Shown piece by piece: positions 7,172 through 55,601 of a DNA stretch of 64,000 bases; positions within the stretch are counted from its first letter, which is position 1; each line of letters opens with the position of its first letter. Source of the DNA: Leidyana gryllorum EB-2025a (taxonomy: Eukaryota > Protista > Apicomplexa). The stretch is from NCBI GenBank assembly GCA_048772705.1, contig JBLWGC010000021.1, positions 1 to 64,000 of the forward strand, in the 5' to 3' direction. The notes under the pieces are model-generated. The model saw nothing but the letters and a program-made list of their open reading frames with translations, was not told the origin of the DNA and searched no databases. The position numbers and the translations under genes are program-made.

Positions 7172-7691
7172 TCAACGGCGTCCCGGCACCGGAAACTTAT
7201 TGGGCTTGACACTGGCAGCGGACGTTCGGGCGTTGTTGTGTTTCACTTACAAGCTGTGGTTCTTCATAGTAACCAATAGTTTGGGCGGATTAGCGACACC
7301 GCAGTGGGGGCTCAGCTGGCAAGCGATGGTATGGGAACGATATATGTACACTCTTACGTTCAGGATGCCTTTCCATTCGCCATTTGTACCAAAATATTGG
7401 TTCAGGTTAAGCCAGGCTTTACCAAAACAGTCAGATTTGCTGAGCAAATCGATGGCCAAATGGCTCGTACCATCCCATTGAAACGTCGCAGTCTCTTCCC
7501 AGCTGGCTTCTGGACCCGAATCCTTCACAGTACGGGTAGTATATTTGTCTTTCATCATCCACAGAATGACATATGGGCTCTGTGTGATTGTGGGAACGGT
7601 CACACATGGCTATTACCGTTTTATGAAGAGTGCCCATCTTCTCGGGCATGTTGGATGCTGCATGGACAGTAATGCTAATAGTTTGCGACAT
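7172..7691 (-). CDS. Small C2-domain protein, copy 1 (spliced)
   Basis: MSQTISITVHAASNMPEKM..SPYVILWMMKDKYTTRTV..WEETATFQWDGTSHLAIDL..CFGKAWLNL; ends VPGRR-stop; homologous to copies 2-4. Confidence 0.85.
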
Positions 7692-50802: not shown

Positions 50803-53321
50803 ATGTCGAGAAGACTTTTGGCGGAAGTGGACAAGGCTCTAAAGGAAGCTCGAGCCACAATCGAACAGTACGATGAACGATGGCGTCAATTACGGCGCTT
50901 CAATCAAACTCAAGTCGGTGTAAAAGAACGGATGTGGGAGGAGTCCAGACGCGAGCAGATGCGCGGGAAGAAACACGCGGTCCGAACCGCGACATTGGAG
51001 TTGCTCGATTTCAAGGTGAGTGGCCCTATTTCTTCTCGCAGCATCAAGTACTGATGCTTGCAGCACGTGTGCGATAACAAGGCGAAAATCGAGACCGACA
51101 TGGAGACTCTCTTGCGAAAGCTCCATCGTCACCGACAACAACTGACGGAATGGCTCACTGTTGGTGAGCTTCGTACACAACAAGACGAACTGAAAGATCT
51201 GCGCAGACAAATCGAACTCAGGTAAGGAAGGACTCCTCGCCCACAGCCCGCCATACATACGCTGTACAACACAGGTATAAGCGCGGTAGAGTATTCTATT
51301 GCTTGGGACAGTCGAGCGAAGACGCCGAAGATGGGGACAATAGCGGCGGACAGCACTCCGCGTGGATATCCAACTACATTGAGAAGCTAAAGCAGCAAGC
51401 TGACCTCTGGGAAGCAGACATTGAGGCTCTTGCCAAACAGATCGATAATGCCGAAAAGGTCTCCCATCTTTACGATCGAAGCGCCCAACTTGAAGCTTTT
51501 GTGGAACTTCACAAGATGCACGTCCGCAAATTGGAAGGAATGCTGCGCGCGATCAGAAGCCACTCTTTATCCGTAAGAACCCGCGTGTGTGCACACACAT
51601 CTATCTCCCCGACCATTTCAGCTATCCGAAACTCAAGCAGAGGAAATTCAGGAGACGCTTCGGAGTTATATTGAAGACAATGACGACCTAACCATTGTTG
51701 TCGCGGATGAGGTGTACCACGATATTGACTTCCCCACTTATGGTAAGTCGACAAGGGCCCTGCCACTGCCAACAATGCTCCTTACCCCGCAGAGTCAGGC
51801 GAGGACAATGATTCGGTCAGCGAAGCTCCTTCCCCCATTGGTCAAGGCGGTTCTGTGTCTCGCCTCGCTAGTTCCGGTGGCAACGATGGGACCACTTCTC
51901 CTCAAACCAACGAGAGTCTCAAATCGCCTAAGGAGACCAATCCCTCGTCCCCGCGAACACTGTCTGCTGCCAAGACCACTCTGCCGAAAGTCAAAGCTGT
52001 GCCCGCAGCCGCGGTGTCACCTCCGCGACCCTCGCAATCCCTCCAACAGCAGCAAAACCGAGCCACAGCCTGGCAACGCAAGACCCGCAACCCCGCGGAT
52101 ACGCGAGAAGCTGCCCCTGCTGCTACCGCTGTGGTTGCGTGTGCTACTGACAGCACAGCCGCAGCGGCAACAACAACATCAGCTGCGATGACAACGACTA
52201 CGACGACTACTATCCATCAGATGGTTGCAGCGGCCGAAAGTCCGTCCAGTACGGCTGCCACTCAACAACTGCCGGCCGGCCAAAGCCTTCAAAGAGGGAC
52301 GACTCCGTCTCAGCCACAACAAACCGGGGGGCCCACGGCTCAACAGGACGGCGATGCGGCAGCAGTAGCAGGCGGTCGTCGTCAAACTACGAGCACAGCC
52401 TCGACTGATGGGCCTCGTCATTTGGTGATAGCCGAGGACGTGGCTGCGTATGACTGGGAGTACACGAGCAAAGGGTCTGGTGAAACCGCTTCAAGCAACA
52501 AGACCTTAGAAGTCCGGTGTGGCCAACGGCTATTGATAGTACGGATAGACCCCTCAGGCTGGACGTTTGCGTTCATCGATAGACGGGACACTGTTCCGGA
52601 ACCGTTGATAGTGAACGAAGACGGATCGAAGCAGCTGAGTGCTGAGGCCAGTCGAGTGTTGCCTTCTGGGTGGTTTCCGAACACAGTGCGTGCGTCCGTG
52701 AAAGCTGCGAGGAAACAGAAACGCGTTGAGGAGAGCGGACGGCGGACTTCGAGCACAACGGAAAGCTCCAGCAACAATGCGCTCTGGGACCCGTCGTGGT
52801 GGGATGCGTCACCAGGTGGGATAGAGGAGTCGCCATCGTTGCTGCAGAGGCTAAACTTGATGCCGAGTCTGTTGGAGCTTCCTCAGTGCAGTCAGTCTTC
52901 TATAGAGATGGCAAAGTCGATCGATCAGTGCAGATGGTGGTGGAGGGCGCTCTGCCACCCATTGCGGGTCGGCACAGTACGTGTGGTGCATTTAGCCTGG
53001 CAAGGACAGTTACTCCAGCGTTCCTGCTGCACATGTGCGGATCCCAACTCATTCCTTCAACAAGGCGATTTTGATCCCGAGTTGCCCGCACATGATCTTC
53101 TCTATGTATCTGTGGGAGACAGGCTGTTGGTGGAAGAGGTGAGCGCAGACTACAAGTGGGTCTACGGCCATCGAGTGTCTAGCGACCGGGTTTGCTCATT
53201 GCGAGGGTGGATTCCTTCCTATCTGCTGACACATCCGTCGGTCCTAATGCAGAGGCTGGCGTGCCACTTAACAGCTTTCGTCGATTTTTCCATTCCAACC
53301 AACCGACCACTCAAACCCTGA
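50803..53321 (+). CDS. CNOT3/Not3-5 N-terminal domain protein fused to two SH3-like domains
   Basis: RRLLAEVDKALK..EQYDERW..KAKIETDM..KLHRHRQQLTEWL..RRQIE..WISNYIEKLKQQADLWEADIE..HKMHVRKLEGMLR..IQETLRSYIE..VYHDID aligns with the Not3 NTD. SH3-like segments VAAYDWE..LEVRCGQRL..GW..GWFP and LYVSVGDRL..WVYG..RGWIPSY follow. Confidence 0.8.
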
Positions 53322-53337
53322 CCCATTTTTTTCTGCT

Positions 53338-55601
53338 ATGGGGGACCCCCTCCTTCAAGCTCTCACACAGGAGGCCTGTACGTTCTTCCAATCCCAACCG
53401 GTTCACGAATGTCTATCGGAATCCTCCAAACTACTGCTCCTCGACTCGCAGGTCTCATTATCAGTGGCTGTAAAAGCCCTCGACCAATACAGTGAGTTTG
53501 ACACTCGATTGCTTCTGTCTCCGTGTGTGCTTGCGCTCGCGCAATGAGTTGGCATTGTGAGAATGAGCCCAGTAGTGCTGCTTATTACTCTCATTATCCG
53601 GAAGCACTGTGTAATTGTGTCTGTATAGACTATCTGGCGTGCGTCGCGCGCCCACCAGCAGGCATTCGTAACACATTTGTTTTCAGAGCGGCCATTCGCT
53701 TGTGTCTTCGCCCCCCGAGTTCCTGAATTCACCTATGTATTCGACGCGTTTGACGTGGTGGCCTTCGCCATCCACGTCTATAAATACTACACTGACACAC
53801 AGTATCTGGGCCAGCTGCACGACGCGTTGTGCTCGGTGATCCAGAACAGTAACACCTTTGGGGACTATCTGTGCTTGGTGGAAGGGGATGGAGAGCCGAT
53901 CACGGAGGAAGTGAAAGAGAATCTCGTTCGCGACTTGGACACGACGCTGGGGAGCGTGGCGGACACCTTTAGCCTCCGAGACTTTGAGAAGGAGGAGCCG
54001 TATCTTGGGCATTCGTATACGGCTCTTCTCTCCTCTGGTGGTGGTGGCCGTACCACTGTAGACACGGCTGCCGAAGAAGAGGAGAAAGACGCTCTGAAGA
54101 CTCCCATCCACGCAGTATTCTCCTCGACTACCGAGGACCGAACGACGGCAACGACACTCAACACAGATATAACTCCCGAAGATTCTGGAGACCCCCACGC
54201 CCTCTCAATTAGAAGAAGAATAGAGCTCATATTCCCGCCCCCCTGGGCCTATGACTTGGAAAGATGGAACAGTGAGCGCGCTTTACCCTCTGAGCTGGTT
54301 CAAATCTTTGGTGTTGGCAGAGTTGAACGCACGCGCGTCCGCCCTTCCCCACTTGTCGATAGTGCACACCGCTCTCGATGCTGCCAAATTGTTATTGGAG
54401 TGCGAGTGAGTTGTGCATTGGATTTGATTGGCAATAGTCAAATGGAACACAGGCGATCGCGTGTGATTGTGTGGGATGACGCCCGGGCAACGCCCTTTTC
54501 GTTTCTGACAACAACTTCATTGTTGGCGCATATGATTCAGCACGTGAGTGGTTTGGAGCGGTTCTGTGCGTAAGTTTGACCGCCGCTGTTCAGTTCCGCA
54601 GCCGTTCCGAGATTCTCGACAAAAAAGTACTGTCCGAGTTGCGAGTGGGAGTGAATTGCAACGATCTTATCGTTGCCCCTCACACGACTAAATTTGTCAA
54701 GGTGAGGCTATAGGGCTGTGATGTGTGTTGACAGTGGGCGGGGGGCGGTATTCTTCAGGTTCTGGAGATTCTGAGAGGACGGCGCTGGTCTGCGGTGCCC
54801 ATAGTAGATGCCGAAGACGGATCTTTCATCGGTTTATTGTCTGTATCACACGTGACCTTCTTGGTGCTGCGGTCACTGTCTGACTCAGAATTGAAGTGGC
54901 ATTGGGATGACGAAGTTGGAGACATTTGGGAGGTATTGGTGAGCACCGGTGCGGCGCATTCAAAGATGGTTCGTCACACGTATGCGCACACAAATCGAGC
55001 GAAGCAGCCGACGGCGGCTCCAGAGGTCCCAGCTGCAACTACATCTTCTCGGAGAGCGATAACATCGAAACACGGGGGAGCGTTTCTGGCCAAACTGGGG
55101 GATATGACCACTGACGAGAAGCAGGACAAAGTCACCGACACGGCCCCGGAGGATAGCGGCGGCAAGTGTTCCGATCTCCCGGCGCTGGTGGAACCGTTGG
55201 AAAGTCTCGAGTCCCCACCATTGAGTCCTTCAGATTCTCATCAGCCCTCCACCAATCCCTCAAGTGCCACAAGCGCGGTACAAAATCTCGTTAAGAACAT
55301 AACATGTTCTGCGATGGTGAGTTTCATTCATTCATTCATCGCTCTCCATCCGTCTACGCTGCTGCGTTGCAGGTGATGGATGAGGATATGACGCTGCGAC
55401 AAGCCATTGCCCATCTGGTACTCACAGATGACAGGCGTATTGTCTTTGTTGACTCTGACACGTAAGCCCGGCGGTGTCAAGCTTGTACACGATCGAAAGC
55501 AGTTTGGTTGCAGCGGGCGAATCAAAGGCTACATCACACCCTCACAAATCATGTCACTACTCATTAGATATTCTCTACCGACCGCAGCCGCCTCTAACTA
55601 G
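53338..55601 (+). CDS. AMPK gamma/SNF4-like CBS-domain protein (divergent, multi-exon)
   Basis: FFQSQPVHECLSESSKLLLLDSQVSLSVAVKAL resembles the AMPK-gamma N-terminus; CBS motifs AVPIVDAEDGSFIGLLSVSHV and RIVFVDS..RIKGYITPSQIM. Confidence 0.7.

What the first reader, a model, noticed from the sequence alone, without database searches (positions are those of the whole stretch)
50803..53321. CNOT3/Not5 ribosome-sensor domain fused to two SH3 domains, NOT-box missing
Seen: the spliced N-terminal region aligns helix by helix with the Not3/Not5/CNOT3 NTD. It has an insertion of about 40 aa and lacks the KTKAYSKEGL-type motif. A T/A/Q-rich linker follows, then two SH3-like domains with long loop inserts (about 52440-52690 and 52970-53230). 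No NOT2/3/5 box appears before the stop. Established: the Not5/CNOT3 NTD enters the vacant ribosomal E-site, and the C-terminal NOT-box region tethers it to CCR4-NOT. Inference: this paralog may sense slow ribosomes but recruit different, proline-rich partners, i.e. a rewired translation-surveillance adaptor.
Basis: partly seen in the sequence, partly recalled or inferred. Interest (0 to 1): 0.8.

Follow-up and report, generated by a model that had tools for sequence, protein, structure and literature searches.

The report
Not5-type ribosome head joined to SH3
This gregarine gene joins a modified copy of the ribosome-binding head of the mRNA-decay subunit Not5/CNOT3 to two SH3 docking domains instead of the part that anchors it to the decay complex; the same unstudied design is conserved across Toxoplasma relatives, gregarines and chromerid algae.

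Summary
Window 50803-53321 (+) is a five-exon gene, 772 codons by the unjoined exon model.

- **N-terminal domain.** Exons 1-4 match Pfam Not3 (PF04065) colinearly, and also match human CNOT3 and yeast Not5 from ribosome structures.
- **C-terminus.** Exon 5 holds a low-complexity linker and two true SH3 domains, shown by profile searches and by AlphaFold2 plus Foldseek. There is no NOT box (Pfam negative; hhalign probability 0.2%).
- **One gene.** The exon junctions fit a Blabericola protein exactly. In a syntenic relative, one open frame holds both the N-terminal domain and the first SH3.
- **Not unique.** About 20 clusters share the design: Neospora, Besnoitia, Cystoisospora, Porospora, Blabericola, Digyalum, Polyplicarium and Vitrella. 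Database names are automatic, and five full-text searches found no study. A second copy lies on contig C169; the scan noted it separately (s1-587174).
- **Function.** The ribosome-sensing idea is only partly supported. Not5's tRNA clamp motif is replaced by RYKRGRVFY. A conserved insert of about 37 residues lengthens the helix hairpin whose tip touches 18S rRNA in yeast. Only about 5 of 15 listed contact residues remain.
- **Ubiquitin hint.** Some relatives carry a UBA or a RING domain.
- **Side finding.** This genome has Not1, Not2, Not4, Caf40 and a Not3/5-type NOT box, but no canonical N-terminal domain was detected.

The parts
50803..51015 (+). Exon 1: start codon, helix alpha1 of bundle a and the first half of the family-specific insert (conserved block EQMRGKKHAVRTATLELLDFK).
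   Evidence: Pfam Not3 profile 2-49. Matches yeast Not5 residues 2-62 in 6tb3. 77% identical to Blabericola P0002 residues 3-72. Alignment A5.
51064..51221 (+). Exon 2: second half of the insert, then helix alpha2 (keeps the residues matching CNOT3 R57 and R59) and most of alpha3. It ends in a split codon.
   Evidence: Pfam Not3 profile 38-83, 26.6 bits. 73% identical to P0002 residues 73-124. Alignment A5.
51275..51572 (+). Exon 3: the RYKRGRVFY motif (the R is the split codon 51220-21 plus 51275; YKRGRVFY is 51276-51299), which stands where the Not5 tRNA clamp motif would be. It is followed by the first two long helices of bundle b.
   Evidence: Pfam Not3 profile 114-194, 42.2 bits. Motif scan. 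Alignment A5. Matches P0002 residues 126-233.
51622..51742 (+). Exon 4: last helix of bundle b and the conserved tail (VVADEVYHDIDF).
   Evidence: Pfam Not3 profile 195-230. 65% identical to P0002 residues 234-273.
51793..52418 (+). Exon 5, first part: S/T/A/Q/P-rich linker of about 208 aa, taken to be disordered, with one PPRP site.
   Evidence: Translation. No Pfam hit. The linker length varies widely among relatives.
52419..52682 (+). SH3 domain 1, with an insert of about 30 aa in the distal hairpin (a structured beta-hairpin plus a short helix in the model).
   Evidence: Profile A2 hits only SH3 chains in the PDB. AF2 pLDDT is 91-97. Foldseek hits are all SH3. hhalign against SH3-2 gives probability 97%.
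52683..52970 (+). Inter-SH3 segment: a basic/Ser-rich stretch, then a conserved SLLQRLN-type helix (about 52890-52952) and a WWW motif leading into SH3-2.
   Evidence: AF2 helix at model residues 171-191. The motif is conserved in P0001, P0002 and P0006.
52971..53231 (+). SH3 domain 2, with an RT-loop insert of about 30 aa that carries a conserved CxC.
   Evidence: Profile A3 hits 161 solved SH3 chains, best E 3.4e-10. The orthologous domain in P0002 passes the Pfam SH3_2 and SH3_1 cut-offs. AF2 and Foldseek.
53235..53321 (+). C-terminal amphipathic helix (53235-53288), a short tail and the TGA stop (53319-53321).
   Evidence: AF2 helix at model residues 286-303. The helix and the stop position are conserved in the syntenic ortholog L010.

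Best explanation
**What is shown.** The locus is one gene. It encodes a member of an old family found in apicomplexans and chromerids, and possibly more widely in alveolates. The family descends from Not3/Not5/CNOT3.
- It keeps the two-bundle N-terminal region that, in yeast and mammals, plugs into the empty ribosomal E site.
- That region is remodelled. The alpha1-alpha2 hairpin is about 37 residues longer and rich in basic residues. The tRNA clamp motif is replaced by a conserved RYKRG(R/K)xFY motif.
- The NOT box, which ties Not5 to Not1 and Not2, is absent. A disordered linker and two SH3 domains stand in its place.

**What is inferred.** The head still binds the translating ribosome or its tRNA/rRNA, but in an altered pose. 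The SH3 domains dock proline-rich partners, so the protein couples a ribosome state to effectors outside the NOT module. Relatives that carry a UBA domain (Vitrella) or a RING finger (unnamed transcripts) between the head and the SH3 domains point to ubiquitin signalling at the ribosome. That would parallel the Not5/Not4/eS7 pathway.
For: **One gene.** The exon pieces are exactly collinear with the Blabericola protein P0002. In the syntenic ortholog a single 456-codon open frame spans the N-terminal domain and SH3-1. TransDecoder- and MMETSP-style source names of P0004, P0011 and P0020 indicate transcripts with both parts.

**Head domain.** Pfam Not3 matches on all four exons. It matches CNOT3 and Not5 chains from ribosome structures. 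The AF2 model of the ortholog head (pLDDT 86) finds CNOT3 in 9c3i, 8bhf and 9c3h at E about 5e-6, and Not5 in 6tb3 at target TM-score 0.77; the next hit has E 0.6. Residues matching CNOT3 R57, R59, E70, E147 and R188 are kept (their roles from PMC7615087).

**SH3 domains.**

**No NOT box.**

**Family.** Among 57 N-terminal-domain relatives, NOT box and SH3 never occur together. The RYKRG clade has 96% SH3-aLRT support, and the SH3 label needs only one change on the tree.

**Ubiquitin hints.** UBA in Vitrella P0006. A RING finger in P0034 and P0052.
Against: - No expression or binding data exist for this organism; no RNA run was found.
- The tRNA clamp motif, described as a tight interaction in the yeast structure, is missing, and its positions are now Ser or acidic.
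- By the alignments, the equivalents of yeast K50, K64, K101, Q8, S40 and H41 are not kept.
- The lengthened hairpin sits at the tip that faces the 40S subunit. Since Not5 'precisely spans' the gap between 60S and 40S, the canonical pose may not fit.
- The head model was made on the ortholog P0002, not on the window protein, because the exons were not joined.
- The SH3 partners are unknown.
Confidence: 0.6

Rival explanations
1. Split Not5. The protein is still a working part of CCR4-NOT, attached non-covalently: its SH3 domains dock on proline-rich segments of Not1, Not4 or the NOT-box-only Not3/5 homolog. In this gregarine, the sensor and the anchor of Not5 would then sit on separate polypeptides.
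For: No canonical Not3 head was detected in the 15.5-Mb assembly. None lies within 6 kb upstream of the Not3/5-type NOT box on C36. The genome does encode Not1, two Not4-type RING loci, Caf40 and a Not2-type box. Just upstream of the C36 NOT-box exons lies an 813-codon frame with four repeats of a motif that contains TPAPG.
Against: Coccidia keep a canonical head-plus-NOT-box protein alongside the SH3 form, so the family did not arise as a replacement. Completeness of the assembly is unknown. The C36 gene model is unresolved. No interaction data exist. The link between the repeats and the SH3 domains is pure conjecture.
Confidence: 0.15
2. The head has been put to another use. The Not3-like helical bundles no longer bind ribosomes and serve as a coiled-coil or dimerisation module, or as a different RNA- or protein-binding module. 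The protein would then be an SH3 scaffold in an unrelated process, such as RNP granules, trafficking or the cytoskeleton.
For: The tRNA clamp motif and about two thirds of the listed contact residues are lost, and a long hairpin is inserted at the 40S-facing tip. Pfam scores for the head are low: 52-85 bits in full-length relatives, against 270 bits for canonical Toxoplasma.
Against: Both bundles, their order and several ribosome- or tRNA-contacting residues are conserved from chromerids to coccidia. The insert and the RYKRG motif are themselves strongly conserved and basic, as expected of an RNA-contacting surface. The RING-containing relatives keep a near-canonical head of 201-220 bits, with most of the clamp motif.
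Confidence: 0.22
3. Gene-model artefact: two adjacent genes, a Not3-head gene and an SH3 gene, read as one.
For: No RNA data exist for this organism. Genes here are packed very tightly; the next ATG is 16 nt after the stop.
Against: Exon 5 is a single open frame that runs from the tail of the head domain to the stop. All junctions match P0002. The ortholog has the head and SH3-1 in one uninterrupted frame. The same fusion occurs in more than 10 species.
Confidence: 0.02
4. The C-terminal barrels are a diverged NOT box, whose core is also a small beta-barrel, and not SH3 domains.
For: NOT-box cores and SH3 domains are both small beta-barrels.
Against: hhalign against a NOT-box profile gives probability 0.2%. 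There is no PF04153 signal. Profile and fold searches return only SH3 domains. The orthologous domains pass the Pfam SH3 cut-offs.
Confidence: 0.01

Closest known systems
Not5 / Not3 (yeast) and CNOT3 (human), the NOT-module subunit of CCR4-NOT
   Same: The N-terminal region has the same two three-helix bundles in the same order. It matches Pfam PF04065. CNOT3 and Not5 chains from ribosome complexes are the best sequence hits, and they are the best fold hits of the ortholog's head model. Residues matching CNOT3 R57, R59, E70, E147 and R188 are kept.
   Different: There is no NOT box and no recognisable Not1-anchor region. The tRNA clamp motif (Not5 K103-L110) is replaced by RYKRGRVFY plus an acidic/Ser stretch. 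A conserved insert of about 37 aa lengthens the alpha1-alpha2 hairpin. The C-terminus is two SH3 domains.
Database-only relatives with the same design: Neospora caninum 'CCR4-NOT transcription complex, subunit 3, related' (CEL68452.1), Besnoitia besnoiti BESB_054440, a partial Cystoisospora suis model (PHJ18099.1; head only, no SH3 in the model), Vitrella brassicaformis CEM07038.1, Porospora cf. gigantea KVP17_003671, Blabericola migrator EP01053_P003015
   Same: They share the same insert, the RYKRG(R/K)xFY motif and one or two C-terminal SH3 domains with a GWFP signature. The gene here is the ortholog of the Blabericola protein (65-77% identity in three of the four head exons, 47% in the third).
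   Different: Coccidian members are much longer (1650-1700 aa). The Vitrella member carries an added UBA domain. The paralog on contig C169 and its relatives have RHRRGKVY and a single SH3. None has been studied experimentally as far as my searches show.
Tandem-SH3 adaptors such as p47phox, sorbin/vinexin and STAC
   Same: Two SH3 domains in tandem. The p47phox, sorbin and STAC2 tandem-SH3 structures align over both barrels in Foldseek. The conserved Trp, Gly, and Gly-Trp-x-Pro positions are present.
   Different: The two SH3 domains are about 95 residues apart and carry long loop inserts. The ALYDY-type motif is degenerate (AAYDW in SH3-1, HLAWQ in SH3-2). The N-terminal partner domain is unrelated.

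Membership tests
Not3/Not5/CNOT3 (canonical CCR4-NOT subunit) | N-terminal Not3 domain (PF04065; helical bundles a and b) | tested here: met
   All four exons hit PF04065 colinearly; exons 2 and 3 score above the 25.8-bit cut-off on their own. PDB sequence hits are to CNOT3 and Not5. The ortholog model matches the CNOT3 N-terminal region at E about 5e-6.
Not3/Not5/CNOT3 (canonical CCR4-NOT subunit) | tRNA clamp motif (KTKxFSKEGL type; Not5 K103-L110) | tested here: not met
   A regex scan finds it in 22 of the 57 relatives (19 of them NOT-box proteins) and in no member of the SH3 family. In alignment A5 its positions hold RYKRGRVFY and then Ser, Glu and Asp.
Not3/Not5/CNOT3 (canonical CCR4-NOT subunit) | C-terminal NOT box (PF04153) that pairs with Not2 and binds Not1 | tested here: not met
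   No PF04153 hit in exon 5 at E<=10. None on contig C21. hhalign probability 0.2% against a NOT-box profile.
Not3/Not5/CNOT3 (canonical CCR4-NOT subunit) | Physical membership of the CCR4-NOT complex; binding to the E site of 80S ribosomes | not testable with these tools
   This needs IP-MS, polysome gradients or cryo-EM. No RNA or protein data were found for this organism.
SH3 domain superfamily | Sequence-profile match to SH3 domains | tested here: met
   Profile A3 hits 161 solved SH3 chains at E<=0.01, best 3.4e-10. Profile A2 hits only SH3 chains, best 6.9e-4. The window sequences alone are below Pfam detection, but the orthologs pass the cut-offs.
SH3 domain superfamily | Five-stranded SH3 beta-barrel fold | tested here: met
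   In the AF2 model, pLDDT is above 90 in the SH3-1 core and mostly 84-93 in the SH3-2 core, lower in its RT-loop insert. The top 50 Foldseek PDB hits are all SH3 domains, probability about 1.0 for single-SH3 hits, target TM-score 0.6-0.82 for single-SH3 hits.
SH3 domain superfamily | Intact proline-peptide binding surface (ALYDY tyrosines, the conserved Trp, and the Pro and Tyr of the 3-10 helix) | tested here: inconclusive
   The Trp and the Gly-Trp-x-Pro are invariant in the family. The ALYDY equivalent is AAYDW in SH3-1 and HLAWQ in SH3-2. The final Tyr is kept in SH3-2 (SYLL) but not in SH3-1 (NTV).
Apicomplexan/chromerid Not3-head + SH3 family (unnamed; 'RYKRG family') | Insert of about 37 aa between alpha1 and alpha2 holding the RGKKHA(V/I)RT..LEL block; the R(Y/H)(K/R)RG(K/R) motif; C-terminal SH3 domain(s) with GW(F/I)P; no NOT box | tested here: met
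   All four features are present. The closest relative is Blabericola P0002. The clade has 96% SH-aLRT support in a quick tree.

The most novel reading that the evidence does not exclude
In gregarines the ribosome-sensing head of Not5 has been separated from the NOT module. The NOT-box protein carries no head. Two head-SH3 proteins are the only carriers of the sensor, and they re-attach through SH3/proline contacts, either to CCR4-NOT or to a ubiquitin ligase or reader. More generally, Apicomplexa would run a second, CCR4-NOT-independent branch of ribosome surveillance built on a remodelled E-site probe.
Probability: 0.15. Interest if true: 0.8.

Novelty: new variant of a known kind. Interest (0 to 1): 0.6.

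Why it matters
The Not5/CNOT3 head is the only known protein probe of an empty ribosomal E site, and so far it has been studied only as part of CCR4-NOT.

A conserved family in which this head is cut loose from the NOT module and wired to SH3 domains (plus UBA or RING in some relatives) would have two consequences. It would show that the probe is a portable module. It would also point to a second read-out of slow or stalled ribosomes in Apicomplexa, a group that leans heavily on post-transcriptional control.

Orthologs exist in Neospora and Besnoitia, close relatives of the tractable Toxoplasma. The idea can therefore be tested by tagging, polysome profiling, proximity labelling and cryo-EM.

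The remodelled contact elements are a natural experiment on what the E-site probe needs: no clamp motif, a new RYKRG motif and a longer basic hairpin.

Tried and rejected
- **Pfam on the window's C-terminus.** It gave no SH3 hit, either for exon 5 as a whole or for the two pieces. The SH3 call therefore rests on family profiles, orthologs and fold.
- **Word-index protein search with the C-terminal third.** It found a single relative, P0001. The exhaustive representative search was needed to see the family.
- **RNA evidence.** The run search returned one DNA-type run holding 7% of the words and no RNA run. Read laying was therefore not used, and expression and splicing are unconfirmed for this organism.
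- **A canonical Not3 head in this genome.** Three searches found none: PF04065, the canonical Toxoplasma protein, and an unfiltered local hmmsearch over the loci around both NOT boxes. I do not treat this as proof of loss, because assembly completeness is unknown and the first-look search scores only the best candidates.
- **Taxon of the MMETSP and Logan relatives.** The contig look-ups gave sample ids only, so I claim no named host group for the RING variant.
- **Literature.** Five full-text searches and the 2025 CCR4-NOT review (no occurrence of 'SH3', 'Apicomplexa' or 'Toxoplasma') gave nothing on a Not3-head/SH3 protein.
- **Rejected explanations.** C-terminus as a diverged NOT box. Two separate genes.
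- The spliced protein was never joined. All searches used single exons by reference, and the head fold was predicted on the ortholog P0002 rather than on the window protein.
Full report
**Gene model.** The stretch 50803-53321 on the + strand reads as five exons: 50803-51015, 51064-51221, 51275-51572, 51622-51742 and 51793-53321. The four introns are GT..AG and 48-53 nt long. Two codons are split across introns. The stop is TGA at 53319-53321, and an in-frame stop lies 17 codons upstream of the ATG. Every search used single exons by reference, and the total of 772 codons is a sum of the pieces.

The model is supported in three ways.
- The five exon translations are exactly collinear with the 817-aa protein P0002 of the gregarine Blabericola migrator: exon 1 residues 2-71 match P0002 3-72, exon 2 residues 1-52 match 73-124, exon 3 residues 1-99 match 126-233, exon 4 residues 1-40 match 234-273, and exon 5 residues 5-495 match 276-778. 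No residue is missing at any junction.
- In a syntenic locus of a related organism (L010, from a public assembly), the equivalents of exons 2-5 form one uninterrupted 456-codon frame that holds both the N-terminal domain and the first SH3 domain. The stop falls at the same place.
- No RNA run exists for the organism itself, so its own splicing and expression are unconfirmed.

**The head.** Each of exons 1-4 hits Pfam Not3 (PF04065), in order: profile positions 2-49, 38-83, 114-194 and 195-230. Exons 2 and 3 pass the cut-off alone. Exon 1 matches yeast Not5 residues 2-62 from the ribosome complex 6tb3. The ortholog matches human CNOT3 residues 52-233 from 8bhf and 9c3h.

An AlphaFold2 model of the ortholog head was built from P0002 residues 1-285 with 36 aligned rows (pLDDT 86.4). 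It has six long helices: residues 2-55, 57-103, 109-135, 147-183, 190-228 and 236-251. Its only significant Foldseek matches are the CNOT3 chains of 9c3i, 8bhf and 9c3h (E about 5e-6), and yeast Not5 aligns at target TM-score 0.77. The next hit has E 0.6. Both helical bundles of the CNOT3 N-terminal region are therefore present.

**How the head differs from the canonical one.** Alignment A5 shows two family-specific changes.
- An insert of about 37 residues sits between helix 1 and helix 2. It is strongly conserved (block EQ-L/M-RGKKHA-V/I-RT..LEL..D.KH) and basic. In the model it lengthens both helices of the hairpin by about 22 residues each.
- The KTKxFSKEGL-type motif is replaced by RYKRGRVFY followed by Ser, Glu and Asp.

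The Not5 ribosome paper (preprint 10.1101/854810) names that motif the tRNA clamp motif (K103-L110). It grips the anticodon stem of the P-site tRNA, together with the eS25 tail and 18S G1575. The same paper places the alpha1-alpha2 loop (S40, H41, K44) on 18S h23/h24, and states that the domain precisely spans the 60S-40S gap.

I mapped its listed contact residues through the alignments. The window protein keeps the equivalents of R4, K44, K55, K58 and R60. It loses Q8, S40, H41, K50, Q57, K64, K101 and the clamp residues. In bundle b, the equivalents of CNOT3 E147 (eS25 contact) and R188 (uS7 contact) are kept; their roles are from PMC7615087.

My reading is that the fold and part of the RNA-facing surface are kept, but the canonical E-site pose cannot be assumed.

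**The tail.** Exon 5 begins with a low-complexity linker of about 208 aa. Pfam sees nothing in the rest, but relatives settle the matter.
- A profile of the family's last domain, with the window sequence as first row, hits 161 solved SH3 chains at E<=0.01. The best is p47phox at 3.4e-10.
- A profile of the first domain hits only SH3 chains, best 6.9e-4.
- The two domains match each other at hhalign probability 97%.
- An AF2 model of window 52380-53318 has pLDDT 91-97 in most of SH3-1 (lower in its RT loop) and mostly 84-93 in the SH3-2 core, lower in its RT-loop insert. All 50 best Foldseek PDB hits are SH3 domains, and tandem-SH3 structures span both barrels.

SH3-1 is at 52419-52682, with a structured insert of about 30 aa in the distal hairpin. 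SH3-2 is at 52971-53231, with an RT-loop insert of about 30 aa. A conserved helix precedes SH3-2 and another follows it.

The C-terminus is not a NOT box. There is no PF04153 hit, none on the whole contig, and hhalign probability against a NOT-box profile is 0.2%.

**Distribution.** An exhaustive search of 1.84 billion cluster representatives with the ortholog found 57 proteins at E<=0.001. About 20 share the insert and the RYKRG motif.

Named members:
- Blabericola migrator
- Porospora cf. gigantea
- Polyplicarium
- Digyalum oweni (SH3 form, but the scans found neither the RYKRG motif nor the insert block in its head)
- Cystoisospora suis
- Besnoitia besnoiti
- Neospora caninum
- Vitrella brassicaformis

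Pfam finds Not3 plus SH3 domains in the full-length ones and never a NOT box. Across all 57 proteins, NOT box and SH3 never occur together.

Canonical Toxoplasma and Cystoisospora proteins have a Not3 head (270 bits in Toxoplasma); a NOT box was confirmed for the Toxoplasma one. So coccidia have both forms.

In a quick maximum-likelihood tree of the head, the RYKRG family forms a clade with 96% SH3-aLRT support, and the SH3 label needs only one change. The root, and the place of two long branches, are uncertain.

Two variants bear on function. Vitrella has a UBA domain between the head and the SH3 domains. A group of unnamed transcripts (P0034, P0052) has a near-canonical head of 201-220 bits, a C3HC4 RING finger and two SH3 domains.

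**This genome.** It is 15.5 Mb in 237 contigs and most likely belongs to a gregarine. The nearest named relative of this protein is Blabericola, and other agents of the scan reached the same view independently.

A second head-SH3 gene lies on contig C169, minus strand (locus L007, about 5478-2578). It has RHRRGKVY, one SH3 domain, and an intron or gap of roughly 900 nt. This is probably the scan's note s1-587174.

The genome also encodes Not1 (C159), two Not4-type RING loci (C104, C15), Caf40 (C43), a Not2-type NOT box (C143) and a Not3/5-type NOT box (C36).

No canonical Not3 head was found by three searches: the Pfam model, the canonical Toxoplasma protein, and an unfiltered local search of 6 kb upstream of the C36 box. 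This may be real loss, a very diverged head, or a gap in the assembly.

**Mechanism.**
- *Shown:* one gene, a Not3/5-type two-bundle head, two SH3 domains, no NOT box, and conservation from chromerids to coccidia.
- *Inferred:* the head still engages the ribosome or its tRNA/rRNA in a modified way, with the basic hairpin and the RYKRG motif replacing lost contacts. The SH3 domains recruit proline-rich partners outside the NOT module. The UBA and RING variants suggest ubiquitin signalling, by analogy with Not5/Not4/eS7.
- *Rivals:* a non-covalent 'split Not5' still attached to CCR4-NOT (0.15); a head put to another use that no longer binds ribosomes (0.22); a gene-model artefact (0.02); a diverged NOT box (0.01).

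**Novelty.** The architecture is visible in sequence databases under automatic names. Five full-text searches and the 2025 CCR4-NOT review gave nothing on it. I rate it a new variant of a known kind. The window's gene is one ordinary member of an unstudied family, not a one-off.

Noticed in passing
window 53319-53340; L010 7584-7610: The next gene, a CBS-domain gene that another note calls AMPK-gamma-like, has its ATG at 53338, only 16 nt after this gene's stop. The same tight stop-to-start spacing is kept in the syntenic relative. The 3' UTR of one gene must overlap the start of the next, or the two are co-transcribed.
   Followed up: partly
G000 contig C36, locus L008 2766-5204 and 5222-6431: Just upstream of the Not3/5-type NOT-box exons lies an 813-codon frame with four repeats of a motif of the form W-Y/F-Y/F-NDG-x-RD-W/L-TPAPG-L/F-L/M-D and a long Thr/Ser-rich tract. 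Its stop lies 17 nt before an ATG that may start the NOT-box gene. Whether it is the same gene is unresolved, and no Pfam family hits it.
   Followed up: partly
whole genome G000 (C21, C169, C36, C143): No canonical Not3 head domain was detected anywhere. The two NOT boxes (C36, C143) and the two Not3-type heads (C21, C169) all lie on different contigs. The gregarine Not5 homolog may be headless.
   Followed up: partly
proteins P0034 and P0052 (locus L014); P0043: A further architecture occurs in unnamed transcripts: a near-canonical Not3 head (201-220 bits, partial clamp motif ELKTKAFS), a C3HC4/TRAF-like RING finger and two SH3 domains. This amounts to a Not5-like head and a RING finger, the domain type of Not4, on one chain.
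   Followed up: partly
protein P0006 (Vitrella brassicaformis CEM07038.1), residues 583-623: The Vitrella member carries a UBA-like domain between the head and the two SH3 domains. Its database name ('UBA domain-containing protein') hides the Not3 relationship.
   Followed up: no
L007 (G000 C169:141000-147000), minus strand, about 4830-3890: The paralog has a gap of roughly 900 nt between its first coding block and the next. The introns of the window gene are about 50 nt. What this long intron contains was not examined.
   Followed up: no
window 53040-53060; L010 about 7320-7335; P0002 about 665-670: The RT-loop insert of SH3-2 keeps a CxC pair (CCTC here, CKC and CQC in relatives), plus a nearby upstream Cys. 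This could be a small metal or disulfide site. pLDDT is low in this part of the model.
   Followed up: no
L010 7220-7253: The ortholog's only intron inside the SH3 region is 35 nt long (GTAAGA...CCAG), which is very short. The window gene has no intron there.
   Followed up: no
protein P0061 (Neospora caninum CBZ51143.1, 2268 aa): An older Neospora gene model fuses the head-SH3 protein to an actin-family domain (residues 1808-2260). The newer 1655-aa model lacks it, so this is probably a merged neighbour gene.
   Followed up: no
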